IMG/VR virus record: IMGVR_UViG_3300042519_004024
Span: 1-64,000 of that record
Reading direction: 5' to 3' (one strand)
DNA length: 64,000 nucleotides
A model generated the notes under the pieces. That model made no database searches and had not been told where the DNA came from. It worked only from the letters and a program-made list of their open reading frames with translations. Shown here in pieces: positions 6,100 to 63,991 of the stretch (position 1 is the stretch's first letter; each line of letters starts with the position of its first letter). The translations under genes and the position numbers were made by a program.

Positions 6100-6246
6100 G
6101 TACCTTTATGATTGTCAGTGGTTCAGTCCGAGACGGGTCAGGGAAACAAGTTCTTCTCTAAGAGGGTGGACTCCAACCTGCCTTATAGTTTACAAAAGTT
6201 GGGACGTGTTGGAGTCTACTCGGTCCCCATCGTTAGTGACAGTTAC
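6100..6246 (-). ncRNA. candidate structured non-coding RNA, family unknown
   Basis: GC-enriched, with nested stems (9-bp GACUCCAAC/GUUGGAGUC; CCGAG/CUCGG; UGUCA/UGACA), downstream of a host-type promoter; boundaries approximate. Confidence 0.4.
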
Positions 6247-10451: not shown

Positions 10452-10454
10452 ACT

Positions 10455-12022: not shown

Positions 12023-12023
12023 A

Positions 12024-13288: not shown

Positions 13289-13310
13289 AGTAATAAATAC
13301 TATAAAAATA

Positions 13311-13337
13311 AAAAACCCCACCTATAATGGATGGGGA
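13311..13337 (-). terminator. intrinsic terminator
   Basis: CCCCA/TGGGG stem plus T-run after the nitroreductase. Confidence 0.65.
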
Positions 13338-13343
13338 CTTTTA

Positions 13344-13973: not shown

Positions 13974-14075
13974 AATTATTTTTGTTTTACTCTCAATTAT
14001 AGAACTTTTAAATTTTATTGTAAACAAAAAATAGGGTTATTTACCCCCATCGATATTTGTTTTTGTATATTCATA

Positions 14076-14534
14076 TTATATAATTATTAAATCCCAAGCT
14101 TTACACCCATACTTATCGTTTATTAAATTTAAAAGACTTTCTTTCCAATTCATTTGTGGACCAAAGTAGTTTTCAATATCTTCGGCAAAGTCCTGATAAA
14201 ATACAATTACATTAAAACGTGGATCTTTAACATCAGGGAAATCATAACAAGGTTCAGGTAATTCATCTCTTAATTCTTTAGGGTAATCCCCATCATCATC
14301 GTATTTAGTATCATCAACCAATTTAAATATATAATCTTCATAATGATGTGTCGGTAAAACAAACCCGATAGCATATGGATCACAACATACCCCCATACCA
14401 CAGTTATAGTTTGCCCAATCGTAGTACATATCATCAAACCCATCAAACAACATATTAAGTAGGTTGTGTAGTACGGGTTTAATGTTTGTTTCTTCCCTTA
14501 ATACTTTTTTTATGTGTTCTTTTTTACTTCTCAT
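14076..14534 (-). CDS. protein with degenerate leader
   Basis: MRSKKEHIKKVLREE; start overlaps the 3' end of 14524..14826. Confidence 0.7.
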   Translation of the reverse strand: MRSKKEHIKKVLREETNIKPVLHNLLNMLFDGFDDMYYDWANYNCGMGVCCDPYAIGFVLPTHHYEDYIFKLVDDTKYDDDGDYPKELRDELPEPCYDFPDVKDPRFNVIVFYQDFAEDIENYFGPQMNWKESLLNLINDKYGCKAWDLIII

Positions 14535-14826
14535 CACAATTTGTGTTTGTTATAATAGCAAATAAGGATACAGGTATATATGCTTTTAAAGAAACTTCCA
14601 ATTTTTCATTTAAATAATTACCTGAATCCCCATTATATAGTACAAGTATTATATATGTATTTTCCACATACACAGCAACTACATCACATACATTTTCCTC
14701 ACCAAGATAACTTATTGTGAGTTCCTCCAAAAGATCAGAAAATTTACCTTTATTTACAGTTTCTTTTTTAAACTTCTTTATGGTTTCTTCCCTTAATACT
14801 TTTATTATGTGTTCTTGTAGGTTCAT
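14524..14826 (-). CDS. leader-bearing single-module protein (VCD..YIP..C module)
   Basis: MNLQEHIIKVLREE; body resembles the repeats in 17367..19274. Confidence 0.8.
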   Translation of the reverse strand: MNLQEHIIKVLREETIKKFKKETVNKGKFSDLLEELTISYLGEENVCDVVAVYVENTYIILVLYNGDSGNYLNEKLEVSLKAYIPVSLFAIITNTNCDEK

Positions 14827-15422
14827 TGCTGTAATTGGTTTTTAACCGTATTATAAAAATATTCACTAACTTTTTTTGGTGAGTCAATATTTTTTCCTTT
14901 CATGTCTCTTTTATAATGACTAATCATCATTGATATTTGTTGTAATGAAATATTTTTGTACATTTGTGGTGGTGTAAATGAACCAATTAGTCCCATCTTT
15001 TGAAGTTGTCTGATTTTCCTTGCCGCGAATTCATCTGCAACTTCCTCTGTATTTTTCATAAACTCAGCGGCATGTCTTTCTGAAACATCACCCAAATAAC
15101 AACGATACATAAGTTCTTCACCATACTTTTTAAATTGATATTGGTGCGCAACTTCGTGAAGTATAACAAACAACAAAAATGGTAATGGTCTATTAAGTAC
15201 TGTTGAATTAATTAAAACCCCAGTTTCTAATGCGATACCTAATGCTGGTACACTAAAACTTGAGAAGTTTATTCTTTTACAGTTTGATTCTTCAATAAAC
15301 TTTTTTACGAATTCTTTTAGTTCATCTGACATATCATGTGTATTTGATAATTCATCTAAGAATACATCAATACCTTCTGTCTCTTCCTTTAATATTCTTC
15401 TTATATGTTCTTGTAAATTCAT
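14823..15422 (-). CDS. leader-fused HExxH zinc metallopeptidase (ImmA/IrrE-like)
   Basis: FVILHEVAHQY and EEVADEFA. Confidence 0.7.
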   Translation of the reverse strand: MNLQEHIRRILKEETEGIDVFLDELSNTHDMSDELKEFVKKFIEESNCKRINFSSFSVPALGIALETGVLINSTVLNRPLPFLLFVILHEVAHQYQFKKYGEELMYRCYLGDVSERHAAEFMKNTEEVADEFAARKIRQLQKMGLIGSFTPPQMYKNISLQQISMMISHYKRDMKGKNIDSPKKVSEYFYNTVKNQLQQ

Positions 15423-15423
15423 A

Positions 15424-15792
15424 TTAATATGTAACGTGTTCTGCTTCTGTATCAAACTCACTATTAAACCAATCTATAACATACGTTGCTGCGTCTTCAC
15501 CTAAATAATTTTCAAGCGTTTTATATATTTCTGGATTCATATGTAGTTCTCTTTTTGTAGGGGTATACGACGCATATATATGATCGGTTTTATTATCAAA
15601 ACATTCATATAAAAAACTATCCCAAAACAATGGTCGTCTTTCTTTTAAGTGTGCACCATCTTTATTAAAGTTTGGATAAAGTGCCTTTAATATTGAATCA
15701 ACGGCACTAATGTTTTTAATTATTTGGTTACTGTAGTCTTCCTGTGGAAACTCCTCGATTAATACTTTTCTTATATGTTCTTGTAGATTCAT
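15424..15792 (-). CDS. leader-bearing protein
   Basis: MNLQEHIRKVLIEE; TATTTAT 7 nt upstream. Confidence 0.8.
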   Translation of the reverse strand: MNLQEHIRKVLIEEFPQEDYSNQIIKNISAVDSILKALYPNFNKDGAHLKERRPLFWDSFLYECFDNKTDHIYASYTPTKRELHMNPEIYKTLENYLGEDAATYVIDWFNSEFDTEAEHVTY

Positions 15793-25910: not shown

Positions 25911-26486
25911 TTACATGTACTTACTTCTATAATAATGAATCAATTTTTGTATTGGTTCGAACAGTAATTTAGGATATTCATTATTTAAAAAGTTAATTAG
26001 TTCTGAAATAGATTTAAATTTTTTTGGTGTGTGACTTGTTGTAATTCCTTGGTTGTCATAATCGTCATAACTATCTTTAGATTCCATGTCTTCAAAATAT
26101 GAACCGTCAACAGGTGTTCTGCAATTACCGTCCCAATAAGGTGTTGCAAAACCAACTAATTTAGAATCAATATCTTCATATTCAAAAATAAGATAACCAC
26201 CAAAACCGTCCCATTGTAGTTCTAAACTAACTGTGTCATCTTCAAAACTATACTTTTTATTTACTAAATCAGTGTGACTAAAAAGCATAGATACAAGTTG
26301 ATAAGCAAATCCACAATCAATATGTATTTCTTTATCTTTTAAAAGAAAAAGTATTTGTTCTAAATCTAACCCAGTATATTCTGAAATATCATAAAAATTC
26401 ATCCCATCATTCCACATTTTATAAATGAGTTTAGAATTCTTTTCAAAAAGATTATTATATTGTGATTCTGTTATTATTATTTTCAT
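25911..26486 (-). CDS. leader-bearing protein
   Basis: MKIIITESQYNNLFE. Confidence 0.8.
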   Translation of the reverse strand: MKIIITESQYNNLFEKNSKLIYKMWNDGMNFYDISEYTGLDLEQILFLLKDKEIHIDCGFAYQLVSMLFSHTDLVNKKYSFEDDTVSLELQWDGFGGYLIFEYEDIDSKLVGFATPYWDGNCRTPVDGSYFEDMESKDSYDDYDNQGITTSHTPKKFKSISELINFLNNEYPKLLFEPIQKLIHYYRSKYM

Positions 26487-26860
26487 GCATCAATTGTTTT
26501 GATATCGTAGTTAAAATTATCTTTAAACCATTTTTTAAATACAGGTTTCCATAATTCACCAAATTGATTTAATAACTCAATTTTATTGTAGTCTTCAATA
26601 AACAACACAGGACTTTCCATTAAAATATAATCATCCATTTTTTCATAACTTTGTTGGTATAAAATAAATTCCATTGTCCCGTGACTAAAGTCCCCACTAT
26701 AAAAATAAATATCGTCTGATATAACATACTCACGGTTATCAAAATCATATATTTCCTGTTCACCATAAGATATGTCACTAACATCGTACAAATCATTTAT
26801 ATAATCATAAATGTGTTGTTCCATTTCATTAAGTTGGTTCTCTGTAATTATTATTTTCAT
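26483..26860 (-). CDS. leader-bearing protein
   Basis: start moved to MKIIITENQLNE (TAATG overlap). Confidence 0.8.
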   Translation of the reverse strand: MKIIITENQLNEMEQHIYDYINDLYDVSDISYGEQEIYDFDNREYVISDDIYFYSGDFSHGTMEFILYQQSYEKMDDYILMESPVLFIEDYNKIELLNQFGELWKPVFKKWFKDNFNYDIKTIDA

Positions 26861-27264
26861 TACCAATTGAAGTCTTTTCTTTTATTAATTATTTCTCCTA
26901 TTTCTAAAGTAACGAATCCACCCCCAATAATGTTTCTTGCCTCCACCTGCAGTTCATAAATAAAGTTATCTAAATTGTTATATTCGTGTATTGAATCAAC
27001 ATAACAATTAACTTTTATGTGTATAACATCCATTTTATTTTTTTCAAAATAATCCATAGATGTTACTTTTGATACGTCTACTACTTTAATTTCTTCAATC
27101 ATATCTACAGGGTCACAAATAAGATTTTGATGTGATCTAATATAATATCCACCTTCACAATTTTCTTTTACCTGATCAAAAGCCATGTCAATAAGACTTT
27201 GCATGGAATCTGTATTTGACTCCAACAACATTTTATACTGACTTTCTGTTAATATTATTTTCAT
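26860..27264 (-). CDS. leader-bearing protein
   Basis: start moved to MKIILTESQYKMLLE (ATGA overlap). Confidence 0.8.
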   Translation of the reverse strand: MKIILTESQYKMLLESNTDSMQSLIDMAFDQVKENCEGGYYIRSHQNLICDPVDMIEEIKVVDVSKVTSMDYFEKNKMDVIHIKVNCYVDSIHEYNNLDNFIYELQVEARNIIGGGFVTLEIGEIINKRKDFNW

Positions 27265-27821
27265 TCTTTTATCCAACATAAATTTGTGTCAACCATTATT
27301 CCTGTTTTTTTAGTTACTTCTTGATATAATATATCTTCAATTATTCCCCTAATTTCACTATCAATTTCCCACCACAAGTCTTCATTTTCTTCTAAATCTT
27401 TTAAATAGTGGGTTTCGCCATCAGTCATTATTAAAGTTACTTTACCGTCACTTTCAATTGGTCCATTAACAAATATCAAATTATCTTCTTCATAGTCACT
27501 ATGAAACTGCGGTTTAAACTTAAAATTATATCCACCCCTAAAATCATAATCCATAGTGTCAAATGTTCTATCCATTAGTTGGAAAGCCTTTTCAATCATT
27601 TTATCCCAACCACCAAGAAAATCCCTATACATTTCGTAAATTTCTTTCCTGTCTTGTGGTTTATAATTTACGTAATCAGCAATTTTTGGATCGAAATCTA
27701 TCGTACCTGTACTATCCAATTCATTTTGCCAAAGTTTAAAAAACAACTTTTTAGCCATTTTATCTTCTTCAGAATAGGATTCTAATATTTTGTATTGTGA
27801 TTCAGTTATTATTATTTTCAT
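27261..27821 (-). CDS. leader-bearing protein
   Basis: MKIIITESQYKILE. Confidence 0.8.
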   Translation of the reverse strand: MKIIITESQYKILESYSEEDKMAKKLFFKLWQNELDSTGTIDFDPKIADYVNYKPQDRKEIYEMYRDFLGGWDKMIEKAFQLMDRTFDTMDYDFRGGYNFKFKPQFHSDYEEDNLIFVNGPIESDGKVTLIMTDGETHYLKDLEENEDLWWEIDSEIRGIIEDILYQEVTKKTGIMVDTNLCWIKE

Positions 27822-28393
27822 TATTTTACCATTAAATCTACATGTATTGGTAATCCAATAGGTTTTAATACTTTTGAAAAGTATGAATACGCCTCATCTC
27901 TTAAAAACTGTACGAAATCATCGGTGTCGTATTCTAATAGACTATACTGTTCAAATATATCCATGTTTGGTACCATATCCATCATTTCAGTATCTTCATT
28001 ATAAACATACCCATCAACCGTACCGTAAACAACTCTACATATAATATCAACCATACCACCTTGTTCTCTTTCGCCGTAAGAGTAAACTTCATCAATAAAA
28101 ATAACCATGTCTAAGTTACTATCTCCTTTTATTTGTATCTCATCGTGTTCTATTTCATCTTTGATTGATTGTAATAAATGTTTGTATCCACCTCTGTAAT
28201 CATACCATATAGGTCTTATCGTATTATAATCATCATTAGAATCTTTTCTAATGTCAGTAACATGATAAATGATATCATCTAAAACAGGTTCCATTCCTTG
28301 TTTTTTTTGGTTGTCCCAAAAAGAAAATAAAAACTGTCTAAGGTTATCCTCAGTCATTTTTTTATATTCGGCTTCTGTTAAAAATAGTTTCAT
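27821..28393 (-). CDS. leader-bearing protein, likely paralog of 27261..27821
   Basis: MKLFLTEAEYKKMTE; FLFSFW vs LFFKLW. Confidence 0.8.
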   Translation of the reverse strand: MKLFLTEAEYKKMTEDNLRQFLFSFWDNQKKQGMEPVLDDIIYHVTDIRKDSNDDYNTIRPIWYDYRGGYKHLLQSIKDEIEHDEIQIKGDSNLDMVIFIDEVYSYGEREQGGMVDIICRVVYGTVDGYVYNEDTEMMDMVPNMDIFEQYSLLEYDTDDFVQFLRDEAYSYFSKVLKPIGLPIHVDLMVK

Positions 28394-29247
28394 TATTTCT
28401 TGTTTGGCACAACATTTCCAAATTTATGTTTACCTATTGTTATAGTTGGTACCCACTTGGTTGTGTCGGTATTTTTAGTCCATGATGGTGTGACGTATGT
28501 TGCGTGATAATATTGAGCACCTCCCGTTATGTCACTAATAGAGTCTATCGATTTGGCTATTGTTATTGCGTTTTGCATTTGACTATGCTCTCTAAATTTG
28601 TCATAGACATCTTGTAAAACTTCATCCCCTTCATTATAATCATTCCACATTGAAAACTGATAATCAGCTAAAGCTTGACTTTGTGGTGTCGCTCCATAAC
28701 CATTGTGATTTGCGTCCGCTCTATTTTTTAAAACATTAGCAACCGCAGTCATTCCCTTAACCGGATTAGTTTCACCACCAGCTTCACCAATTAATGTACA
28801 AACTATTATTTTTTGAGTTTTTGTTAATTGATTAAAAAGTTTTAGTGCGTCACTTTTGGTTACTTTTTCTGATGTGGTTGTTACTTCTTTTTCAGGTGTA
28901 TCATTTTCAGGTGTTTCGTCCCCTTCTAATTTTTCAACAGTTTTTTTACCTATCTGAGTTCCTTTAACTTCACTGGGTTCCCAAAGTTTTTTAACAGCCT
29001 CTTGTGTTTTCTCACCGTAGTAACCATTATAGCTTTTAGTATCCAACAACCCTTTATCCTGTAACATTTTTTGTATTTTTACAATTGCTGAGGTTTCACT
29101 TGAATTGCAATACCCCTTTTCTATTATTGAACCATTTTTTACTTGATCTAATGTTATTAGTGTGTCTTCTTTTTTACCTTCAGGGCACGGGTTTGTAGAC
29201 TCCTTTAATAGAAGATTAAATTGACTTTCTGTTATTATTATTTTCAT
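28393..29247 (-). CDS. leader-fused peptidoglycan-binding domain plus SleB/Hydrolase_2 cell wall hydrolase
   Basis: VKIQKML..NGYYGEKTQEAV; TLIGEAGGE, AVANVLKNR, YQFSMWN, GAQYYHA. Confidence 0.85.
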   Translation of the reverse strand: MKIIITESQFNLLLKESTNPCPEGKKEDTLITLDQVKNGSIIEKGYCNSSETSAIVKIQKMLQDKGLLDTKSYNGYYGEKTQEAVKKLWEPSEVKGTQIGKKTVEKLEGDETPENDTPEKEVTTTSEKVTKSDALKLFNQLTKTQKIIVCTLIGEAGGETNPVKGMTAVANVLKNRADANHNGYGATPQSQALADYQFSMWNDYNEGDEVLQDVYDKFREHSQMQNAITIAKSIDSISDITGGAQYYHATYVTPSWTKNTDTTKWVPTITIGKHKFGNVVPNKK

Positions 29248-30776
29248 TCGCATATAACTTTTTCTTTTTCAACATAAGGTACTGTTTTTACCATAGGAAT
29301 TAATTCATCCTTATTTTTATATCTAAAAGTCCTTATTTCATTAATTTTTTCTTTTATTCTAAATCTAATTGATAGTCTTTTTTCGTTACAACCTCTTTGT
29401 CCTTTATTAGACCAATATAAATCGATGTACTCTATAGGTACAATAGTGTCATACTCATATATAATTCCACCTATTTGTGATTTTACTTTTTCTAAGTAAT
29501 CTGTAGCCGACGGGTTTGATACTAACCAGTCAAACACTCTCTGAATTAATTCATTATACATTTCAACATATTCTCCTTTGAATGCTATTTTTTCAGTTTC
29601 TTTAAATATTGAGAAAAATTCAGATAAGTAACTATCAATAAATGGATCCATTTTTTTTACTTCAAAATGTGTTCCTGATGGGAATATTAACTCACCGTTA
29701 TATGTCAAATCTTTTTTGCTAACAATGTCTGCTTTTAAATAATAAGATCCTTGTGTTAATGATTTTTCAATACATCTTGTCATCTGTTCAAAAACAATAT
29801 CTAAAGTTCTTTCTTCAGATTTAACTTGTGTTAGTATATCAAATAATGTTTGTTTTGCATCGTCATCACAATAATGATTTAATCTTAAAAATGTTGATTT
29901 TTTTTCAAAATGATCACCAACAAATCTTTGTTCGTATTTTTGATGTTCGGCAGTTTTTGCTTGTCTGGCTAAATCATCAACATCTTCAATTTCAATATCT
30001 TTTCTATTTTTTTGTCTATTAATGATTCTTTTTGTTTCAGTATCATCATAGTCATCATCCCAAACGAAATCAGAAATTAATTTTAAATAATTTATTGTTC
30101 TACCCTCATCTTTAAGTGCCAAATCAACTATAATTGGAAACATTCCTACATTTTTAAATCTAAAATACCTATCTAAATCTTCCATAGCAACATCTAACTC
30201 CACTTGTTCATCTTCACTTAATTTTTTTCTCATCTCGTAAAGACTACAAAACGGTTTATTTTCTTTTTGGTTATAACATAGTTTTTGAACTACGTTTTCA
30301 TATCTCTTTGCTAATTCATTAAGATGTTCGTATTGTTCTTCTGTAATAATTATATTAATTTTTTTTGAGTTATTAGACATCATAGACTCGTCAGTTTTTT
30401 CTTTCTTTTTTCCTTTTTCAGGTATTTCATGTTCTTTTGGTAAAATATCAATTCCTATTTTTTTACCAAATATTATTAAAAATGGTGTTACAGGAATTGG
30501 TATTGGGATTATTGAGATAACAATCATTAATAAATTTTTAATTACGTCTCCTGATTGTCCTTGGATAAACTCAACATCTTTTTTATCTAAATCAAACTCT
30601 CTTGTTTTTGAATATGATTTAACTGCATGGGTTAATATTCGAGCCAATGCCCTTGTTTCTTCCATTTCAGACTTTGCTCTACTTTTAATGTCTTTGAATT
30701 TGGATAATATTTTTTTTAATACTCCTTCTTCACTTTTATTTTCGGATAGTAATAAATCCCTTTTTTTAAATTCCAT
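29244..30776 (-). CDS. two-part protein with an internal leader; C-terminal PD-(D/E)xK-like motif
   Basis: internal KKINIIITEEQYEHLNE; KAD..FEVK; TATTTAT 4 nt upstream. Confidence 0.7.
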   Translation of the reverse strand: MEFKKRDLLLSENKSEEGVLKKILSKFKDIKSRAKSEMEETRALARILTHAVKSYSKTREFDLDKKDVEFIQGQSGDVIKNLLMIVISIIPIPIPVTPFLIIFGKKIGIDILPKEHEIPEKGKKKEKTDESMMSNNSKKINIIITEEQYEHLNELAKRYENVVQKLCYNQKENKPFCSLYEMRKKLSEDEQVELDVAMEDLDRYFRFKNVGMFPIIVDLALKDEGRTINYLKLISDFVWDDDYDDTETKRIINRQKNRKDIEIEDVDDLARQAKTAEHQKYEQRFVGDHFEKKSTFLRLNHYCDDDAKQTLFDILTQVKSEERTLDIVFEQMTRCIEKSLTQGSYYLKADIVSKKDLTYNGELIFPSGTHFEVKKMDPFIDSYLSEFFSIFKETEKIAFKGEYVEMYNELIQRVFDWLVSNPSATDYLEKVKSQIGGIIYEYDTIVPIEYIDLYWSNKGQRGCNEKRLSIRFRIKEKINEIRTFRYKNKDELIPMVKTVPYVEKEKVICE

Positions 30777-45538: not shown

Positions 45539-46792
45539 TTAACGTTTGAATTTAAACTCAGTCTCTATTTTTCTTCTTCCGTATTTTTTCTCCATTATCT
45601 TTTGGTGTAGATCCCAATTAATTATAGATTCGTTTGTTTGCTCTTTTTCATCAGGAATAAGTGAATATATTTTACCAAGTCTTTTAATTAATTTTGTTGC
45701 AACATAATTAAATCTTTCACATTCATCAACAAAAAATTGATCCTCTTTCTTTTGGTATCTAGCAAGGTGACTTAAAAACTTGTGTCTGACTTTTTCAAAT
45801 TCTTTGTCATCTTCATTATTTTTTACCATATGCCCCATACCTAACATTCTCATAAATCCTGCCATTCTACTATTACCATCCTCTGTCATTCTATCAAAAA
45901 CATCTCTTTTAGCACTTATTAAATTAATGTAAACCAAATCCATAATTTCTTTTATTTTTTGCTCTTCAGTCATATCTTCATATGGTGCACCCGCATGTTC
46001 TAATAAAGCATCAATACGATCCATTTGTTCGTATAGTTTTTCAATTAAATTAGAATAACTAAAATCTCTAATTTGTTTTAATTCTTTAACAACTTTATCG
46101 TTTTCAAAAAATTCTCTAAATTTTTCTTTTGTGATACCAGTTAATTTCATTCTTGTTGCTATTTCAGTTGGTCTAACAAGGTTTTCAACATGTTGAATGA
46201 AATAACTATATCTCATAAAATCATTGATGACTGGAATTCCAAAGTTTAGTCCTTGACTTGCATAAGCTTGGTAATCAGCGTCTTTTCCTATCAAATCAGT
46301 TTCTTTTTTTTGTTTATCAAACTTATGTTTAATTTCATGAGCGATTACAGATATCATATCAACCTTATCTTTAGTGAAACAATTGTAAACATCTTGCGAA
46401 TCCCAATTATCACCATTTGATGCAAAATTAATAGATAACTCAATAATATTGTCTAATTTATGAACCTTCATTAAAATTTTTCTATCGAATTTAAATTCAT
46501 TTGCAACACCAGCAGAAATCATTTCTAATGGACCATCATAATCATCCATTTCATGAATTTCAACTCGTAACTCTAACTCGTTTATTGTATAATCAGATAT
46601 TATTAAATCTAAATCATCTTCAGTAAATGTTTGTATTGTCTTGTAATCCACCATACCTTTTAATAGGTTTGCAACGATTTCGTATAGTTCTTCAGCCGAT
46701 TCAATAATTCCTTCAGGGACACCAACGGCTTCACTTAATAGATTTTTCACTATTAAATTCATTTGTTTTTCTGTAATAATAATTTTTGCCAT
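45539..46792 (-). CDS. leader-fused HExxH metallopeptidase-like protein
   Basis: MAKIIITEKQM..LLSE; VIAHEIKHKFD; TATTTAT 4 nt upstream. Confidence 0.65.
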   Translation of the reverse strand: MAKIIITEKQMNLIVKNLLSEAVGVPEGIIESAEELYEIVANLLKGMVDYKTIQTFTEDDLDLIISDYTINELELRVEIHEMDDYDGPLEMISAGVANEFKFDRKILMKVHKLDNIIELSINFASNGDNWDSQDVYNCFTKDKVDMISVIAHEIKHKFDKQKKETDLIGKDADYQAYASQGLNFGIPVINDFMRYSYFIQHVENLVRPTEIATRMKLTGITKEKFREFFENDKVVKELKQIRDFSYSNLIEKLYEQMDRIDALLEHAGAPYEDMTEEQKIKEIMDLVYINLISAKRDVFDRMTEDGNSRMAGFMRMLGMGHMVKNNEDDKEFEKVRHKFLSHLARYQKKEDQFFVDECERFNYVATKLIKRLGKIYSLIPDEKEQTNESIINWDLHQKIMEKKYGRRKIETEFKFKR

Positions 46793-46817
46793 ACATATAA
46801 ATATATTGGGGTTTGGT

Positions 46818-47471
46818 TTATCCCACAACCCCAACTAAATTGTCTAAATGGTGATCATTAATCATATCTGAAGCAACCATTCTTTTATCCATTATTTTAA
46901 TAATTTCAGAAATACTGTAAGGATCCAATCCATTACCGTCTACTCCAACATCCATTTTTTTACCGTTACCAAATTTACGGTTTTCAGGTAAGTGAACGTG
47001 TCCGTGAAGATGAATAACACCTTTGTTCATACCATTCCAACTTTGAAGTGGGTAGTGGCATAAAACAAAATCTTTTCCCTCAATGTTTACTTCCAAGTAG
47101 TGTTGTACACTTAAAAATCTTCCTTGAACGTAATCACGATTATTTTCAATGTGGTGATCGTGGTTTCCAAGTATTAAATGAATGTTATGACAAACAAGTC
47201 TTTCAAGAAAAATTCCAATGTTATCGAATCCACCGAATGAAACATCACCCAACATAATAAGTGTATCGTCTTGCCCAACAAGATTATTAATACCATCAAC
47301 AAGTCTTTCATTCATTTGTTCAATAGTTTGAAAATCCCTTGTTGATTCAACAGGTACTTCACCATCTTGTGTTCTCCAATTGGTTGCTCCTCTTACAATA
47401 TTTTTATGTCCAAAGTGCGTGTCTGATGTTATCCACACTTTTCCTGACGTTAATAATTTTTTAAAACTCAT
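46818..47471 (-). CDS. calcineurin-like metallophosphoesterase
   Basis: SDTHFGH, LGD, GNHD, CHYP, HGHVH. Confidence 0.9.
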   Translation of the reverse strand: MSFKKLLTSGKVWITSDTHFGHKNIVRGATNWRTQDGEVPVESTRDFQTIEQMNERLVDGINNLVGQDDTLIMLGDVSFGGFDNIGIFLERLVCHNIHLILGNHDHHIENNRDYVQGRFLSVQHYLEVNIEGKDFVLCHYPLQSWNGMNKGVIHLHGHVHLPENRKFGNGKKMDVGVDGNGLDPYSISEIIKIMDKRMVASDMINDHHLDNLVGVVG

Positions 47472-47857
47472 AACTTTATTTCAAATCTTTGACACATTTG
47501 TTCTATTTTATCTTCCGGCACACCGTGTGTATTTTTACCACCGTGTCTATTTTCGACAACAACTGAAAAAACAGTATACCCATATTCTTTTGCCATATCA
47601 AAATATGGTTTCATTTCCCATTCTTGTGTTGATGTATTTGAAACCACAATCTTTGGATATTCTAAAATCATATCGGATTTTACAAACCCCTGACACCATT
47701 GATGAGCATTTTTGATTTTAGTTGAATCAAATTGGTAGTTACCGTCCACGTCAATGAAGAACATATCAGCTTCGTAGTGTTGCCCACCCAATGTTTTAGC
47801 AAATGTAGATTTACCACTTCCCGGTATTCCTCTTACTATGTATAAAACTTTTTCCAT
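47468..47857 (-). CDS. P-loop kinase (polynucleotide-kinase/AAA_33-like)
   Basis: RGIPGSGKST, EAD, VSNT, HGVP. Confidence 0.85.
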   Translation of the reverse strand: MEKVLYIVRGIPGSGKSTFAKTLGGQHYEADMFFIDVDGNYQFDSTKIKNAHQWCQGFVKSDMILEYPKIVVSNTSTQEWEMKPYFDMAKEYGYTVFSVVVENRHGGKNTHGVPEDKIEQMCQRFEIKL

Positions 47858-47861
47858 ATTA

Positions 47862-47893
47862 CAAATATACAATTATTGTTTTAATCTATCAAA
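47862..47893 (-). promoter_or_regulatory. Bacteroidota-type promoter TTTG-N20-TATATTTG
   Basis: consensus match; back-to-back with a + strand TATTTAT at 47895-47901. Confidence 0.75.
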
Positions 47894-47910
47894 CTATTTA
47901 TAATATTATT

Positions 47911-48282
47911 ATGGAACATCTGATTAGAAAAATATTATTGCAGGAAACTTTTGGTAGAGATCGTTGGGATGCTGAGTATTCGGATGAATATCCAAAATAT
48001 AAAAATATGTTAACAACAGCAATTAAAATGGATATAACGGCATCAGGTAAAAGTGAAACTTCAATCATGCTTGGTGACTCAAATGGAAATATTTTAATTC
48101 ATTTTAAAATTGGTAGTAAAACTCTTTATTATGACTATAATTGGTCAGAAGACATTGAAAAGTTAATGCCTTGGCATATTTATGTTAGGCATTTTAAATA
48201 CGCATTGGCTGATTATTTTATCAGTATATTTCCTGACGTATTAATAAAAGATGTGACAGGAGCACATATTACATCATACTAA
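47911..48282 (+). CDS. leader-bearing protein
   Basis: MEHLIRKILLQE; TATTTAT 9 nt upstream. Confidence 0.8.
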   Translation: MEHLIRKILLQETFGRDRWDAEYSDEYPKYKNMLTTAIKMDITASGKSETSIMLGDSNGNILIHFKIGSKTLYYDYNWSEDIEKLMPWHIYVRHFKYALADYFISIFPDVLIKDVTGAHITSY

Positions 48283-48284
48283 CT

Positions 48285-49865
48285 ATGAAAATAATTTTAA
48301 CAGAAGAACAATACAAATACATACTTGTTGAAAGTACTTTAAAAGACACGTTAAATGATTTAAAAATAAACTCAGGTGTTTTATTTACCTTTGGTACTGG
48401 TATAGGCGCGTTCATTAATCCAGTTGAAAGATTACTTTCAGGTTCAGGATTCTCAATGGATGAGAAAGATATTATATTACTAATCATAACATCATTTGCA
48501 CTTATTATAAAAGACTCTGAGGGGTCAACATTATTAGAAAAAGTTAGAGAAAAGGGTTTAATGCCGGCACTTAAGGGTGTTATAAACTTTGTTACAAACG
48601 TAAAAGATGTTTTAAACGCAATTTCAAAGAATCTGATTGGCGTAACGTATTCTTTATTAGATATATTAGGTTTCACACTTCTTTTAAACCCAACAATGAA
48701 AATCATAGATGAGGTGATTAAAGATAACAATATCGGTTTAGATAATACCGAACGACTCTTGTCAGGAGCAGCATTAGCAACAACCGTTTATTCACTTAAA
48801 AGTGTGTTTGGTAAACTTAAAGATAAGTTTAAAAAAAATGTAAATGAGGATATTGAACCTTCTGATGAAGCAATAAAAAACATTTGTGATTCAGAAAAGT
48901 TTTGTAATGCTCAAGGTAAAATAACATTCGGACAACTAAAGGCGTTAGTTGAAAACGCATCAACAAATAGATTAATACAACATGTTGGTGAGGGTGGATT
49001 TAAGGCAACTCTTAGATTACTTCCTTGGTTTTTACCACAACTGGCAATCGCAGGATTTGTTACCTCATCAATAAGAGCGGTTAATAAAATATTAAGACCA
49101 ACATTAGAGGAAACAGAAAACTACAAAACTTGGTGGGGTAAGGTTATTTTAAAATCGTTTAATCTATCTGAAGGTGAGCTTGGTTTATCGGATCCCTTAT
49201 CAAGAGTATTTTTTATATCGGACGGTTTAATGACGATGTTAAATGATAGATATAAAGTTAAGTTTGCAAAATATATTGCAGAAATTGCAAGTGAAATGCC
49301 TGATGATGAACCTGTTCCTGAATTTTTTGTTGAAAATGAATTAAGACATTGGTTAAACGATAAGTTCTTACTAAATCCACCTTTACAACCAAAATCATTT
49401 AAGGAAGTCCCTAATGCTGACGAATCTTTAAATGAAAACTATGTTAGATTCACAGAAGATAATACGTCAGATTTAATTGAAGACTTAATGTCTATGGGAT
49501 TTGATAGAGAAACTTCAATACATGAATTTAATGAACTAGTTTCAATTTATGAGAACTTACCAAATACTATGGTTTTGTATCGTTTGGTTTTTTCGGACAG
49601 TCAAGAAGAGATAGATACTCAGTACCCAGGTTACCACTATACCAGAAAGAAAAAAGATTTATTAGATAATCATTATTTTCAAAGTTATAGAGACTCAAGT
49701 ACAGGTGAAAACCCATATATTATTAAAGTTAGAATACAAAAACAAATGATTGATTTTTACGAATCAATAAAGAATAACATCCTTTATCCGGGTGAAAAAG
49801 AAATAACATTAAAGGATAAGGGATTTGGCGCTAAAATAGTAGAAATAATGCCGGTTAATATTTAA
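48285..49865 (+). CDS. leader-bearing three-module protein: hydrophobic module, second module, C-terminal ADP-ribosyltransferase-like module
   Basis: MKIILTEEQY; linkers VNE and LNE; VLYR..YIIKVRI..YPGEKEITL (ExE). Confidence 0.65.
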   Translation: MKIILTEEQYKYILVESTLKDTLNDLKINSGVLFTFGTGIGAFINPVERLLSGSGFSMDEKDIILLIITSFALIIKDSEGSTLLEKVREKGLMPALKGVINFVTNVKDVLNAISKNLIGVTYSLLDILGFTLLLNPTMKIIDEVIKDNNIGLDNTERLLSGAALATTVYSLKSVFGKLKDKFKKNVNEDIEPSDEAIKNICDSEKFCNAQGKITFGQLKALVENASTNRLIQHVGEGGFKATLRLLPWFLPQLAIAGFVTSSIRAVNKILRPTLEETENYKTWWGKVILKSFNLSEGELGLSDPLSRVFFISDGLMTMLNDRYKVKFAKYIAEIASEMPDDEPVPEFFVENELRHWLNDKFLLNPPLQPKSFKEVPNADESLNENYVRFTEDNTSDLIEDLMSMGFDRETSIHEFNELVSIYENLPNTMVLYRLVFSDSQEEIDTQYPGYHYTRKKKDLLDNHYFQSYRDSSTGENPYIIKVRIQKQMIDFYESIKNNILYPGEKEITLKDKGFGAKIVEIMPVNI

Positions 49866-60669: not shown

Positions 60670-61596
60670 CTAAGATGGGAGTTTTTTTCCTTTGTGATGT
60701 GTTTTTTCGTTTTCTACTTTAATCTTAATCTTTGGTTCGTGTCCCTTTGGTAGTTTGTTTTTAATTCCTACCATTTCCCCCATGTCATTATCCATTCTAA
60801 CAGTAACTTCTTTTTTGTCAAGATTCAACATTATTTGTCCTGTAGTTTGCATGTTGTACATATTCTTAGTTCTGTATGGATTTAAAAATGGATTCTTATC
60901 GTATTTTTGTTTTAATCTGTCAATTACCTCACTGTCTGTTTTTACATCCTCTAAATGTTTTTTAGCAAAGTCTAATCTCATATGAGATGATTTTTTCTTT
61001 TCACCTTTAGTATAACCAACACTTTTATGGTATATTCCGTGGTTAGTTCTTACAATTACTTTTGTTTCTTTTTTTAATTTTTTAATAATAGGCGAATGTT
61101 TAGATGTCATTTCAATAACATAAACACCATTAGAATCTGAAACAAACGTTTCCCCCTTTAACCCAACATCTTTTTTATCTTTACCACTAAACCCAACAAT
61201 AGATTTTATTACTTGTGGTAATGTTTTTTGTGATAATGCCTTTCTTATTTTTTCACCATCATAAGATTTAATTCTGGTTTCAGTTGCATCGTTATTCCTT
61301 TTCTTTTGTACTTCTTTTCCTTCTTTTTCGTCTTGATTAACAAGTAAGCTAGAATTTACTATACCTATACCATATTCATTCATTCCTTCACTCCAATCAG
61401 TATCAACATCTCTCCAATACACCACTTCAACGCCATCAATAAGTTCGTGAACAATCTCAACTTTTGCTTTATACCCCCTGTCTCTATTTTTTGCAAGAAC
61501 AACACTATCACCAAGCCTAACCGCAGCTATTGTACATTCCTTTATTAACTCAGGTTGGGTTTCTTCTATTAATATTTGTTTAATTAAATTGTTCAT
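60670..61596 (-). CDS. leader-fused Ntn-hydrolase (peptidase C45 / choloylglycine-hydrolase-like)
   Basis: LIKE|CTIAA..LAKNRDR..EGMNEYGIGIVNS..RTNHG. Confidence 0.75.
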   Translation of the reverse strand: MNNLIKQILIEETQPELIKECTIAAVRLGDSVVLAKNRDRGYKAKVEIVHELIDGVEVVYWRDVDTDWSEGMNEYGIGIVNSSLLVNQDEKEGKEVQKKRNNDATETRIKSYDGEKIRKALSQKTLPQVIKSIVGFSGKDKKDVGLKGETFVSDSNGVYVIEMTSKHSPIIKKLKKETKVIVRTNHGIYHKSVGYTKGEKKKSSHMRLDFAKKHLEDVKTDSEVIDRLKQKYDKNPFLNPYRTKNMYNMQTTGQIMLNLDKKEVTVRMDNDMGEMVGIKNKLPKGHEPKIKIKVENEKTHHKGKKLPS

Positions 61597-62252
61597 TTAA
61601 ATTTTTTCACTCTTTCTTTTGTTCTCATTTTATTTGCGTAGTCTAACCAAACTTCTTTAACTTTTTTCCATTCTTTTTTTGGATTTTTAAACTTTCTTTT
61701 GTTTTCGTCAAACCATTCATCCATGGCGTCCTCCAAAGATATTTTTTTTGTTTTAGATCTTTTTATCAGTCCTCTAACATAAGCAGGTATTTCAACATTA
61801 GATGTTAAATATTTAAAATTATAATCTTCATCTTCTTCATCATATTCTTCATCATTTTTTACATACATATCGTCAAAATTTTGTTGCTCAACATGTTCTA
61901 ATTCATGTTCAATAGTTTCTTTTACTTCAGCAACTAAATCATTCATACTTTTAGGGAACTCGTCAGGGTTGTAGGTTATTTCAATTTCTATTTCTTGCAT
62001 ATCACCAGATCCCCTAACAGAAAACGGATCTTCCATTTTTTTATCTTCTATAAAATAACAAAAGAAATCAAAATTAGCATATTCATCACCTTTTTCAAAA
62101 TGAATATTCTGTAATTCAAAATCTTTTTTATTTTTAAACTGATTAATAACAAATCTAGATAAAGCCAATGATAGTTCATCTGTTTTTCTTTCTGTAATAA
62201 TTTTTTTTGAGATTTTTTTTACAATCCCCTCTAATAGTGTTTTTTTGTACAT
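61593..62252 (-). CDS. leader-fused HExxH zincin-like protein
   Basis: KKIITE; TIEHELEHVEQ..EIPAY; TATTTAT 4 nt upstream. Confidence 0.65.
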   Translation of the reverse strand: MYKKTLLEGIVKKISKKIITERKTDELSLALSRFVINQFKNKKDFELQNIHFEKGDEYANFDFFCYFIEDKKMEDPFSVRGSGDMQEIEIEITYNPDEFPKSMNDLVAEVKETIEHELEHVEQQNFDDMYVKNDEEYDEEDEDYNFKYLTSNVEIPAYVRGLIKRSKTKKISLEDAMDEWFDENKRKFKNPKKEWKKVKEVWLDYANKMRTKERVKKFK

Positions 62253-62308
62253 ACTAATAAATATCATTTAAAAAAAAAGTATTATATTTGTATCTAAATA
62301 AAATAGAT

Positions 62309-62878
62309 ATGAGATTTTTTGTTGTACTTTTTTTCTTGATTATTAATAATTTTTTACTTTCTCAACAAATTAATAATCAAAATTTTAACTCTTCGGAGAT
62401 GAACCGTGTTTTGTTAAAAACTTTTAACGAATTTCGTAAATCTAAAGGTTTGGATACCCTTATTTATTCTGAAACAGTGTTTGATAGTCTTTCTTACCCA
62501 AACTGTGTTGAGGTTTCTTCTTCTTGTAAATTTTACCATCCGTCGCTTACTAATAGATGGAAAAACAAAACTTTAAGAGAGTTAATTGTAAACGAATCTT
62601 ATAATAAAATTGGTGGTAACGTAATGAGACATTCTTCAGGACTTCCTTGGATGGATACTTGGGAAAATGCCTTTAGATCTTATGGAATCTTTACTAGTTA
62701 TGAAGAAATTGCAAAAATAGCAATTGAAAGTTGGGAAAATTCTCTTGGACATAGTAGAGTTCAAAATATGTCTTTTGAGTCTGGTGGGTTACCGGGGTTA
62801 TTTTCTTGTCATTCGGCTTATGGTAAGAACGGTTACATTTACATATATATAAATTTTGTTACCGTACACAGAAATTAA
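62309..62878 (+). CDS. secreted CAP/SCP-domain protein
   Basis: signal peptide; NEFRKSKGL; WENSLGH; TATATTTG at 62283-62290. Confidence 0.7.
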   Translation: MRFFVVLFFLIINNFLLSQQINNQNFNSSEMNRVLLKTFNEFRKSKGLDTLIYSETVFDSLSYPNCVEVSSSCKFYHPSLTNRWKNKTLRELIVNESYNKIGGNVMRHSSGLPWMDTWENAFRSYGIFTSYEEIAKIAIESWENSLGHSRVQNMSFESGGLPGLFSCHSAYGKNGYIYIYINFVTVHRN

Positions 62879-62881
62879 TTT

Positions 62882-63490
62882 TTACTGTTGTAGATGTGTC
62901 ATAAGAACACCACCTAACGCAGTTGCATGTACTTGTAAATGGTTAATCGATTCCATATCAAGTCTTGTTTTTCTTTTTGTATAATCTAAACCTAAAGTTC
63001 CAATAAACTTATCATCAATTGTTTTAATTGCAAATAAGTAACCAGACTTACAGTTAGTATCTTCTGCAATATATTTTAAACCATATGTAGCAATTGATTC
63101 ATCCTTGTAATCAGGAATTTCAATAACGTCGTTACTTAGTAATTGATTTATAGATTTTGAAAATAGGTTTACTGGTATGTTATGAAAATTTGTTTGGACT
63201 GATGTGACTCCAGGATGTACCGTTTCATACATTATAGAAAACTTAGCCATTGATTTTCCTGTTGGGTAAAAGTTACCCCCATTGTGGAATTGTGTTATCC
63301 AAACCCTATCAGCATTAAACTCTTCTTTTATGTGTTCTATTTTGTTTGTTACAAGCTCTGAAACCCTTAAAGTTTCTTTAACCATATCAGGTTTTTCCTT
63401 CTTCTCAAGCTTACTCTTTATATAAAGAACTAAGATTGGTCCGATAACTCCCGTTATAAATGCAATAATAATCCCCACGTATTCACTCAT
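62882..63490 (-). CDS. single-TM protein with GAF-like domain; T4 gp t-like holin candidate
   Basis: N-terminal TM; ADRVWITQFHNG, YET, IEIPD, FIGTLGLDY. Confidence 0.55.
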   Translation of the reverse strand: MSEYVGIIIAFITGVIGPILVLYIKSKLEKKEKPDMVKETLRVSELVTNKIEHIKEEFNADRVWITQFHNGGNFYPTGKSMAKFSIMYETVHPGVTSVQTNFHNIPVNLFSKSINQLLSNDVIEIPDYKDESIATYGLKYIAEDTNCKSGYLFAIKTIDDKFIGTLGLDYTKRKTRLDMESINHLQVHATALGGVLMTHLQQ

Positions 63491-63499
63491 AATATTTTT

Positions 63500-63748
63500 T
63501 TAATTTGATCCAGAATAATTTCTTTTATTTTCCATTTTTTCATAATAACCTTCTTTAGAACCTTTCCAATCCCAAGGCAAATTATTTTTCATATTGTATT
63601 CCAACTTATCTTTAGAAATTCCTTTTAATTTCATCATAAGTTTTTTATAAAAAGATTCATCATTATTATCCTCCTTATCTTTTTCTAATATAACTTTTTT
63701 GACAATTCTTGTCAAATCAGTTTCGGTTAATCTTGTAAATCTTTTCAT
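63500..63748 (-). CDS. leader-bearing small protein
   Basis: MKRFTRLTETDLTRIVKKVILE; TATTTAT 8 nt upstream. Confidence 0.8.
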   Translation of the reverse strand: MKRFTRLTETDLTRIVKKVILEKDKEDNNDESFYKKLMMKLKGISKDKLEYNMKNNLPWDWKGSKEGYYEKMENKRNYSGSN

Positions 63749-63774
63749 ACTAATTAATAAATATACCGTTAATC

Positions 63775-63801
63775 TAAAAACCCCCACTTTTGGTGGGGGT
63801 T
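63775..63801 (-). terminator. intrinsic terminator
   Basis: AACCCCCAC/GTGGGGGTT plus T-run. Confidence 0.75.
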
Positions 63802-63823: not shown

Positions 63824-63991
63824 TTATTTCTTGTCAACAATAGACCAAATAGCCCCTGTTAATGTCATAGCACCACCAACTATTTCAGTAACAGTTGTTT
63901 CATCCACTAAACCTTTCATTACTAAGATACCACCAACAAATGTCAATGCATGTCTGATGATTCCCATAATTTGTTCTTTAGTTAATTTCAT
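63824..63991 (-). CDS. small two-TM holin-like protein (55 aa), not in track
   Basis: MKLTKEQIMGIIRHALTFVGGILVMKGLVDETVVTEIVGGAMTLTGAIWSIVDKK. Confidence 0.65.
   Translation of the reverse strand: MKLTKEQIMGIIRHALTFVGGILVMKGLVDETTVTEIVGGAMTLTGAIWSIVDKK

What the first reader, a model, noticed from the sequence alone, without database searches (positions are those of the whole stretch)
60670..61596. Ntn-hydrolase whose putative catalytic Cys sits exactly after I-K-E: a zymogen that leader cleavage would switch on
Seen: MNNLIKQILIEETQPELIKE|CTIAAVRLGDSVVLAKNRDR..., with Cys21 encoded at 61534-61536, followed by NRD and GMNE.G motifs typical of C45/choloylglycine-hydrolase Ntn enzymes. Established: these enzymes need a free N-terminal Cys, exposed by processing. 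Inference: cleavage after I-K-E would create exactly the mature N-terminus. This is the strongest internal support that the leaders are cut after Glu, and it suggests activation coupled to head maturation.
Basis: partly seen in the sequence, partly recalled or inferred. Interest (0 to 1): 0.85.

Follow-up and report, generated by a model that had tools for sequence, protein, structure and literature searches.

The report
Phage Ntn-hydrolase precursor with removable leader
A large uncultured phage encodes an amide-cleaving enzyme whose catalytic cysteine is masked by a 20-residue leader ending in the motif that T4-type head proteases cut, so head maturation probably switches it on, though self-cleavage is not excluded.

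Summary
ORF 60670-61596 (-) encodes 308 aa beginning with a 20-residue leader ending I-K-E, followed by the protein's only Cys (codon 61536-61534).

The Ntn-hydrolase reading is supported:
- The AF2 model (pLDDT 81) matches isopenicillin-N acyltransferase, bile-salt hydrolase/penicillin V acylase, NAAA and the proteasome.
- The first beta-strand starts next to Cys21.
- Fifteen distant homologue clusters start Met-Cys.

In 118 of 118 orthologues P1 is Glu and P3 is I/L/V/M. P2, leader length (8-34 aa) and leader type vary freely. P3 and P1 are the two positions that govern processing of the T4 capsid-targeting sequence.

Relatives link the enzyme to phage heads:
- Some encode it beside an S77 (gp21-type) protease and a gp23-type capsid gene.
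- Cultured phage MA9V-1 has the homologue (F-L-N-E|C), an S77 protease, and an h-N-E motif enriched 6.7-fold in its scaffold.

Cleavage by the head protease is still inferred:
- I could not find the protease in this phage's own genome.
- Ntn enzymes usually cut themselves.
- Other branches use [KR]-x-[AGS]|C.

Verdict: a real gene and a new variant of known kinds.

The parts
60670..61596 (-). Whole ORF: 308-aa precursor of a phage Cys-Ntn hydrolase (stop codon 60670-60672)
   Evidence: 1023 homologues
61558..61596 (-). Residues 1-13 (MNNLIKQILIEET): 'type A' stereotyped leader core, predicted amphipathic helix, shared with about 9 other unrelated ORFs of the window
   Evidence: helix 2-13 in the AF2 model; leader family list; conservation is at the protein level, not the DNA level
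61537..61545 (-). Ile18-Lys19-Glu20 = P3-P2-P1 of the proposed cleavage site
   Evidence: P1 Glu 118/118, P3 I/L/V/M 118/118, P2 shows 14 different residues; entropy profile
61534..61536 (-). Cys21 codon (tgt): proposed N-terminal nucleophile of the mature enzyme
   Evidence: only Cys in the protein; invariant; homologues start Met-Cys; beta-strand 1 starts at residue 22
60673..61536 (-). Mature chain, residues 21-308 (288 aa, 32.9 kDa, pI 9.6), Ntn alpha-beta-beta-alpha fold
61480..61488 (-). Asn37-Arg38-Asp39, invariant, 17-19 residues after the Cys (position comparable to Arg18/Asp21 of choloylglycine hydrolases, from my own knowledge)
61369..61386 (-). Gly71-Met-Asn73-Glu74-Tyr-Gly76; Asn73 is the likely oxyanion-hole residue
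   Evidence: G71, N73, E74 invariant; G71 and N73 invariant in the distant set; the role is inferred by analogy
61036..61050 (-). Arg183-Thr-Asn185-His186-Gly187, conserved active-site candidate motif
60676..60690 (-). Gly303-Lys-Lys-Leu-Pro307, nearly invariant basic C-terminal end, function unknown

Best explanation
The gene encodes a phage-specific cysteine Ntn hydrolase with an AAT/C45-like fold. It is made as an inactive precursor. Residues 1-20 are a removable propeptide: a stereotyped amphipathic leader (1-13), a short disordered linker, and the junction Ile18-x-Glu20 directly before the nucleophile Cys21. Most likely the leader works like a T4 capsid-targeting sequence. It brings the precursor into the prohead core, and a gp21-type (Peptidase S77) prohead protease cuts after Glu20 during head maturation. 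That frees the alpha-amino group of Cys21 and switches the enzyme on inside the capsid, so an active, basic (pI 9.6) amidase is delivered with the DNA at the next infection.

Shown: the fold, the identity and position of the Cys, the strict P3/P1 signature, the swapping of leader types among orthologues, and the association with S77/gp23 head modules in relatives.

Inferred: removal of the leader, who cuts it, packaging into the head, and the substrate (unknown; some non-peptide or peptide amide of the host envelope or of a host defence).
For: - Fold. AF2 gives pLDDT 81 and pTM 0.81, with strand 1 starting at residue 22. Foldseek top hits are isopenicillin-N acyltransferase 2x1c/2x1d/2x1e (E 1e-9, TM 0.57-0.60), 3gvz, BSH/PVA, NAAA, acid ceramidase, and the proteasome/HslV. 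PF03417 is hit weakly by 34 of 50 homologues.
- Nucleophile. Cys21 is the only Cys and is invariant. Fifteen representative clusters begin Met-Cys, with stop codons just upstream in the two contigs I checked.
- Junction. P1 is Glu in 118/118 and P3 is I77/L34/V6/M1. P2 is free and the leader is 8-34 aa. Entropy is 0.00 at P1 and 1.20 at P3, against 2.65-3.5 bits at P2 and P4-P12. In the T4 capsid-targeting sequence, processing depends on residues 8 and 10, which are P3 and P1. Asp at P1 blocks cleavage. T4-type giant-phage proteases all cut after Glu (PMC9026906, PMC5694885).
- Modular leader. Orthologues of this one enzyme carry leader types A, B, B2 or C. In the window the same leader types sit on unrelated proteins: a P-loop kinase, DUF2237, and a SleB-like cell-wall hydrolase.
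- Head link. In L053/L054/L045 the gene order is S77 protease (88 bits), scaffold-like gene, Gp23 capsid gene (293 bits), Ntn gene. In L066/L076/L060 the protease lies within 10 kb.
- Cultured relative. Phage MA9V-1 has a T4-type portal, an S77 domain, a gp23-like capsid protein and the Ntn homologue with the leader MTSANNNEFLNE|C. Its protease-scaffold protein carries 18 h-N-E motifs, 13.4 per 1000 aa against 2.0 elsewhere. Small MA9V-1 proteins start MKNFFSFINE|A and similar.
- Second branch. This branch has a different strict junction, [KR]-x-[AGS]|C in 69/69, and its own leader motif. In the one branch-2 contig examined with capsid genes, it lies next to a different head maturation protease. 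No mixed motifs were seen.
Against: - No S77 protease or capsid gene was found in the window or in about 38 kb beyond it. Four collection scans aimed at the protease failed to recover this contig. A fifth, a DNA pattern scan, also failed.
- Ntn hydrolases, including the closest structural relatives (IAT, PVA, acid ceramidase), normally remove their own propeptide.
- From my own knowledge, Bacillus subtilis PurF has an 11-residue propeptide ending Glu|Cys, so Glu at P1 does not exclude self-cleavage.
- The two junction classes coincide with two enzyme subfamilies. Co-evolution of the propeptide with the enzyme's own groove could therefore also explain them.
- [ILVM]-x-E is frequent in this proteome, 40% of 25-aa windows.
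- In the window the gene is not in a head module. It sits 2-3 kb from the holin and endolysin, and its neighbours are not conserved.
- A leaderless Met-Cys member occurs in a phage contig that also has leader-like genes.
- There are no virion proteomics for any member.
Confidence: 0.5

Rival explanations
1. Self-processing precursor. As in isopenicillin-N acyltransferase, penicillin V acylase or acid ceramidase, Cys21 attacks the Glu20-Cys21 bond itself (N-to-S acyl shift). The leader falls off in the cytoplasm. The I-x-E signature reflects how the propeptide lies in the enzyme's own active-site groove. The enzyme need not be in the virion.
For: The closest folds are self-processing Ntn enzymes. 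Relatives embedded inside 500-2800-aa polyvalent proteins always have a strict junction in front of the Cys, whatever lies upstream. That fits an intramolecular cutter. The junction class tracks the enzyme subfamily. Leaderless members show that the enzyme folds without a leader. No protease was found in this genome. From my own knowledge, B. subtilis PurF has a Glu|Cys propeptide junction.
Against: It does not explain why the leader is one of four stereotyped modules shared with unrelated, non-self-cleaving proteins and swapped among orthologues. It does not explain why exactly P3 and P1, the T4 protease determinants, are fixed (PMC9026906). It does not explain why the same h-N-E motif is enriched 6.7-fold in the MA9V-1 scaffold. 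Self-processing Ntn enzymes typically have a small P1 residue (my own knowledge).
Confidence: 0.3
2. The leader is a tag for something other than the capsid. Examples would be a latency or localisation device tied to lysis, or a recognition tag for a phage or host cytoplasmic protease. It would be removed in trans by an enzyme unrelated to head assembly.
For: In the window the gene lies 2-3 kb downstream of the holin and a GH19 endolysin. A cell-wall hydrolase also carries a leader. About 30 leader-bearing genes in 64 kb is far more cargo types than T4 packages.
Against: The holin neighbourhood is seen only in the closest relatives, 9 of 79 loci. The leaders are charged amphipathic helices, not secretion signals. 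Cleavage after Glu with an aliphatic P3 is the known signature of T4-type head proteases. Relatives place the gene in head modules.
Confidence: 0.12
3. The domain no longer acts as a hydrolase on an external substrate. It is only a self-cleaving or structural module.
For: In polyvalent relatives the domain could serve merely to split the polyprotein.
Against: In a stand-alone 288-aa protein a cutter with nothing to release makes little sense. A full set of non-nucleophile residues is invariant across distant members: K36, R38, D39, N73, N185, S203, R207.
Confidence: 0.05

Closest known systems
T4 internal proteins IPI-III and Alt, with their capsid-targeting sequence cut by gp21
   Same: A short N-terminal propeptide of 10-20 aa sits on otherwise unrelated cargo proteins. 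Cleavage is after Glu with an aliphatic P3, and P3 and P1 are the processing determinants (PMC9026906, PMC5694885). Mature proteins are basic. The leader is the only part shared among cargos. Relatives of this gene sit beside S77 protease and gp23 genes.
   Different: No T4 cargo is known to need the cut for catalysis. Here the cut would create the catalytic N-terminus. The leaders are longer, fall into four families, and occur on about 30 genes in 64 kb. Packaging is untested, and the protease has not been found in this genome.
Isopenicillin-N acyltransferase (MEROPS C45, Pfam PF03417; PDB 2x1c/2x1d/2x1e) and CV2077 (3gvz)
   Same: They are the best structural matches (E 1e-9, TM 0.57-0.60). 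Both are Cys-Ntn enzymes made as precursors.
   Different: Sequence identity is 14-16%. The window protein does not reach any Pfam threshold, and profile searches of PDB sequences find nothing. From my own knowledge, IAT cuts itself at Gly|Cys and keeps both chains. Here a 20-aa leader ends in Glu.
Choloylglycine hydrolase / penicillin V acylase (C59), and NAAA / acid ceramidase (C89)
   Same: They share the fold, an N-terminal Cys, an Arg/Asp pair about 17-20 residues after it, and a G-x-N-E-x-G oxyanion motif. The comparison with C59 residues is from my own knowledge.
   Different: TM is only 0.41-0.53. C59 enzymes start Met-Cys or have a 3-aa propeptide. The substrates of those families give no direct clue here.
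Processed ejection proteins of giant phages phiKZ, 201phi2-1 and SPN3US
   Same: Many head proteins carry N-terminal propeptides removed after Glu by a gp21-like protease. Paralogous families share identical N-termini. Short propeptides of 20-24 aa exist (PMC5694885, PMC10052503).
   Different: Their motif is A/S/G-x-E. No Ntn hydrolase has been reported among them. Here the evidence is from sequence only.
Polyvalent (multi-enzyme) proteins of phages
   Same: Distant members of this Ntn family are domains of 500-2800-aa proteins. These also carry topoisomerase IB, RNA ligase, poly(A)-polymerase-like, HAD and 2'-5' RNA ligase domains. In the one contig examined (L235) the gene lies next to head genes.
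   Different: The window protein has a single domain, and its junction is I-x-E rather than [KR]-x-[AGS].

Membership tests
Ntn-hydrolase superfamily (Cys class; C45/C59/C89-like) | Four-layer alpha-beta-beta-alpha sandwich fold | tested here: met
   The AF2 model has pLDDT 81 and pTM 0.81. All 45 PDB matches with E<=1e-3 are Ntn hydrolases.
Ntn-hydrolase superfamily (Cys class; C45/C59/C89-like) | The nucleophile is the first residue of the mature chain, at the start of a central beta-strand | tested here: met
   Strand 1 begins at residue 22, right after Cys21. Cys21 is the only Cys and is invariant. Fifteen representative clusters start Met-Cys, and two were verified on DNA. A residue-by-residue superposition on Cys103 of IAT could not be printed.
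Ntn-hydrolase superfamily (Cys class; C45/C59/C89-like) | Conserved helper residues (Arg/Asp after the nucleophile, Asn oxyanion hole) | tested here: inconclusive
   R38, D39, N73 and N185 are invariant. Their positions in space and their roles were not examined.
Ntn-hydrolase superfamily (Cys class; C45/C59/C89-like) | The propeptide is actually removed and the enzyme is active only afterwards | not testable with these tools
   This needs protein chemistry.
Pfam PF03417 (AAT / Peptidase C45) | Score above the family's gathering threshold | tested here: not met
   The window protein has no hit at E<=1. Of 50 homologues, 34 hit weakly, best E 2.5e-6. I therefore file it as C45-like in fold, not as a member.
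T4-type capsid-targeted, gp21-processed head cargo | Short N-terminal propeptide ending in (L/I)-x-Glu | tested here: met
   The leader is 20 aa and ends I-K-E. P3 and P1 are fixed in 118/118.
T4-type capsid-targeted, gp21-processed head cargo | A Peptidase S77 prohead protease is encoded by the same genome | tested here: inconclusive
   It is absent from the window and from about 38 kb beyond it. About 110 kb of the contig could not be read. It is present in relatives: MA9V-1 (25.9 bits, just under the cut-off of 27), L053 (88 bits) and L066 (109 bits).
T4-type capsid-targeted, gp21-processed head cargo | The protein is found in the virion with the processed N-terminus | not testable with these tools
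   The MA9V-1 paper has only an SDS-PAGE gel and no mass spectrometry.
T4-type capsid-targeted, gp21-processed head cargo | The leader is shared by otherwise unrelated cargo proteins | tested here: met
   Four leader families sit on about 30 ORFs with unrelated domains. Leader types are swapped among Ntn orthologues.
Self-processing Ntn precursors (IAT, PVA type) | Small residue (Gly/Ala/Ser) at P1 and no dependence on another protease | tested here: not met
   P1 is Glu in all close orthologues. The distant [AGS]|C branch does meet this feature. Independence from a protease was not testable.

The most novel reading that the evidence does not exclude
A clade of large phages, probably of Flavobacteriia (200 kb and more), uses interchangeable N-terminal leader modules as capsid-targeting sequences. 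These load dozens of different enzymes into the head. Among them is an Ntn hydrolase built so that the head protease's cut after Glu creates the catalytic N-terminal cysteine. This would be a true protease-gated zymogen, kept harmless in the producing cell and armed only inside the capsid for delivery into the next host. A second phage lineage would do the same with a different leader and a [KR]-x-[AGS]|Cys junction matched to a different head protease.
Probability: 0.35. Interest if true: 0.8.

Novelty: new variant of a known kind. Interest (0 to 1): 0.6.

Why it matters
Two well-known principles would meet in one protein in a way I found described nowhere. Ntn hydrolases are inert until their N-terminal nucleophile is exposed. 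T4-type head proteases trim short targeting leaders after Glu.

If the head protease makes the cut, this is the first case where capsid maturation is the on-switch of a packaged enzyme. It would also give a built-in ruler that fixes the cleavage position of a whole, uncharacterised family of leaders on about 30 genes in this window.

That makes a hard question directly testable: which of a giant phage's hypothetical proteins are injected cargo? It would also offer a portable leader and cleavage module for loading proteins into capsids.

If instead the enzyme cuts itself, the finding reduces to a new, widespread, phage-restricted branch of Cys-Ntn hydrolases with an unusual Glu|Cys junction. 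That is still useful for annotation: 1023 homologues, nearly all labelled hypothetical.

Tried and rejected
- Direct family assignment failed. Pfam, PHROGs and PDB-sequence searches with the protein, and PDB-sequence searches with two profiles, gave nothing usable. Only the structure search worked.
- The hunt for the S77 protease in this phage's own genome failed. tblastn of the MA9V-1 head proteins against the window found nothing.
- A four-step walk along an identical metagenome contig covered about 38 kb past the window and found lysis, signalling and DNA-modification genes, but no head genes. Testing a 218-kb contig from the same sample series showed it belongs to a different, 373-kb phage.
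- Searching for leader-type genes around 230 protease loci, to spot close relatives, found none.
- A scan of 185,579 bacterial and archaeal genomes found no relative. The patterns used were narrow, so absence from cells is only suggestive.
- Conserved gene neighbours were rejected as a functional clue. The HExxH protein, the TM protein and the holin are adjacent only in the nearest relatives.
- The presence of [ILVM]-x-E in all window leaders was rejected as independent evidence. The background is 40% and there are only four leader families.
- Candidate capsid-protein maturation sites (M/I-N-E, V-Q/T-E, L-N-E, just before the Gp23 domain) are consistent with the motif, but they are not proof for the same reason.
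- Two further contexts from the [AGS]|C branch were uninformative.
- Literature searches for the leader strings, and for Ntn hydrolase together with prohead protease, returned nothing.

Full report
**Observation.**
- On the reverse strand the ATG is at 61596-61594, Glu20 (gaa) at 61539-61537 and Cys21 (tgt) at 61536-61534.
- The start codon overlaps the stop of the upstream ORF (ATGA). It is the first start after an in-frame stop, so a leaderless product cannot be made from this gene.
- Cys21 is the only cysteine in the protein. The mature part would be 288 aa, 32.9 kDa, pI 9.6.

**What the protein is.** Sequence libraries are silent for the window protein itself: Pfam, PHROGs and PDB sequences gave nothing.
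- It has 1023 homologues in metagenomes, almost all labelled hypothetical. A profile finds 541 representative clusters.
- An AlphaFold2 model built on 50 homologues is confident (pLDDT 81, pTM 0.81). It shows a helix at residues 2-13, a disordered stretch at 11-19, and the first beta-strand starting at residue 22.
- Every significant PDB match is an Ntn hydrolase. The best is isopenicillin-N acyltransferase (E 1e-9, TM 0.57-0.60). It is followed by CV2077, bile-salt hydrolases and penicillin V acylase, NAAA, acid ceramidase, and the proteasome/HslV.
- Thirty-four of 50 homologues hit Pfam AAT (PF03417), but only weakly.
- Across 51 distant members the invariant residues are C21, K36, R38, D39, G71, N73, G148, N185, G187, G194, S203 and R207.
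- Fifteen representative clusters begin Met-Cys. In the two contigs I examined, stop codons lie directly upstream, so these starts are genuine.

Together this makes Cys21 the N-terminal nucleophile of a Cys-Ntn hydrolase with high confidence. I file it as C45-like in fold, not as a Pfam member.

**The junction.** Anchoring 118 orthologues on the Cys gives a sharp pattern.
- P1 is Glu in 118 of 118, and P3 is Ile 77, Leu 34, Val 6, Met 1.
- P2 takes 14 different residues, and the leader is 8-34 residues long.
- Positional entropy is 0.00 bits at P1 and 1.20 at P3. It is 2.95 at P2, 2.65 at P4 and 2.8-3.5 at P5-P12.
- Orthologues of this single enzyme carry different leader types (A, B, B2, C and others).
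- The cultured relatives, Chryseobacterium phages MA9V-1 and MA9V-2 (39% identity), keep the rule with an unrelated 12-residue leader, MTSANNNEFLNE|C.

The conserved positions are the two that govern processing of the T4 capsid-targeting sequence: residues 8 and 10 of a 10-residue leader. Asp at P1 blocks cleavage there. T4, phiKZ, 201phi2-1 and SPN3US head proteases all cut after Glu (PMC9026906, PMC5694885).

**The leader is a module.** In the window about 30 ORFs start with one of four stereotyped leaders.
- The Ntn protein carries type A.
- The mature parts are unrelated: a P-loop kinase, DUF2237, and a SleB-like cell-wall hydrolase.
- Conservation is at the protein level. Among codon pairs encoding the same residue, 19-29% use different codons.

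A self-cleaving enzyme has no need for a leader shared with such proteins, so the leader has a function of its own. One caveat applies: every leader type contains [ILVM]-x-E, but this is weak evidence. The motif occurs in 40% of interior 25-residue windows, and there are only four families.

**Link to heads.** The window is positions 1-64000 of the 213,924-bp contig IMGVR_UViG_3300042519_004024.
- In relatives L053, L054 and L045 the gene order is Peptidase S77 (88 bits), a scaffold-like gene, Gp23 major capsid protein (293 bits), then the Ntn gene.
- In L060, L066 and L076 the protease is within 10 kb.
- MA9V-1 has a T4-type portal, an S77 domain fused to a long scaffold-like region, and a gp23-like capsid protein.
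- That MA9V-1 fusion carries 18 [ILVMF]-N-E motifs, 13.4 per 1000 aa against 2.0 in 42 other ORFs. Small MA9V-1 proteins begin MKNFFVNE|A, MKNFFSFINE|A and MKTFTCFINE|A. This looks like a set of T4-style targeting leaders using the same motif that precedes the Cys of its Ntn homologue.

**A second branch.** Among 140 representatives with an aligned Cys there are four junction types.
- 55 have Glu|Cys, and P3 is aliphatic in 54 of them.
- 69 have [Ala/Gly/Ser]|Cys, and P3 is Lys or Arg in all 69.
- 15 have Met|Cys and one has Gln|Cys.

The second class is mostly domains of 500-2800-aa multi-enzyme proteins with topoisomerase IB, RNA ligase, poly(A)-polymerase-like, HAD and 2'-5' RNA ligase domains. 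It has its own leader motif. In one contig it lies beside a different head maturation protease and a major head protein. Two strict, non-mixing P3/P1 codes in two phage lineages fit two head proteases. They would also fit two enzyme subfamilies, each matched to its own propeptide.

**Against the head-protease model.**
- I could not show the protease in this phage. It is not in the window or in about 38 kb beyond it, reached by walking along an identical metagenome contig.
- Five collection scans did not recover the contig.
- In the window the gene lies 2-3 kb from a holin and a GH19 endolysin rather than in a head module, and its neighbours are not conserved.
- Ntn enzymes normally process themselves. 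From my own knowledge, B. subtilis PurF has a Glu|Cys propeptide junction.
- No virion proteome exists for any member.

**Verdict.** The leader must come off for activity; this is established knowledge for the superfamily. I rate trans-cleavage by a gp21-type head protease at about 0.5, self-cleavage at about 0.3, and another tag-and-protease system at about 0.1. I found no paper that describes the leaders or links an Ntn hydrolase to a prohead protease. I rate it a new variant of known kinds, with interest 0.6.

Noticed in passing
window 464-31833, 45539-49865, 60670-63787 (list): About 30 ORFs begin with one of four stereotyped leaders: A MKNLIKKILKEE, B MNLQE(H/Q)I.., C MKIIITESQ, D MK.I.RLTE.DL.RIVK. 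They are often in tandem blocks (9348-15792 for type B, 25911-29253 for type C). The downstream domains are unrelated.
   Followed up: partly
window 28393-29253 (-): A SleB-like cell-wall hydrolase (PF07486) with a peptidoglycan-binding domain carries a type C leader. It is a candidate virion-delivered wall-degrading enzyme.
   Followed up: no
window 63824-63991 (-) and just beyond the window end (L352, L355, L363): There is a holin (PF23987) inside the window. Beyond the window lie a GH19 endolysin with PG_binding_1, a GAF-PAS histidine kinase with a response regulator, a peroxiredoxin, DnaJ-like proteins, and N6 and Dam-type methyltransferases. A two-component system in a phage is unusual.
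   Followed up: no
window 61593-62267 (-): A 224-aa (or 219-aa) protein with an HELEH motif has weak hits to Peptidase_M91 and eCIS_core (E 0.013 and 0.23). It overlaps the Ntn start codon by ATGA. It is adjacent to the Ntn gene in only 3 of 79 related loci.
   Followed up: partly
window 62882-63490 (-) and 62288-62878 (+): An N-terminally membrane-anchored 202-aa protein (phrog_38864) is next to the Ntn gene in 7 of 79 loci, including the distant L060. Between them, on the opposite strand, is a signal-peptide protein with a weak CAP-domain hit.
   Followed up: partly
L082:26502-30545 (Chryseobacterium phage MA9V-1 ORF151) and L082 ORFs at 6132, 22539, 26206: The S77 protease is fused to a long scaffold-like region with 18 h-N-E motifs, a 6.7-fold enrichment. 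Small proteins start MKNFF..(I/V)NE|A, like T4 capsid-targeting sequences.
   Followed up: partly
alignment A5 (L169, L172, L176, L177, L178, L166): In 200-430-kb phage contigs the S77 protease is fused to a scaffold region made of tandem ..YSEYLAENLDK.. repeats. Each repeat carries an L-A-E motif.
   Followed up: no
L045:8748-12542 (-): A T4-type portal gene is interrupted by intein and Hint domains. A poly(A)-polymerase-like gene with an intein lies upstream of a class-2 Ntn gene in L444.
   Followed up: no
P0263, P0252, P0211, P0224; locus L235: Giant polyvalent proteins combine this Ntn domain with topoisomerase IB, RNA ligase, poly(A) polymerase-like, HAD (Swiss-army-knife RNA repair), 2'-5' RNA ligase and GGACT domains. 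The junction is always [KR]-x-[AGS]|C. Called starts of the form 'M-x-K-x-A|C' may be too short: in L235 the frame extends upstream to a 31-aa leader with the RIAARHVAS motif.
   Followed up: partly
window 60676-60690 (-): The last residues, G-K-K-L-P, are nearly invariant in the family. No function is known for them; they could be a second signal.
   Followed up: no
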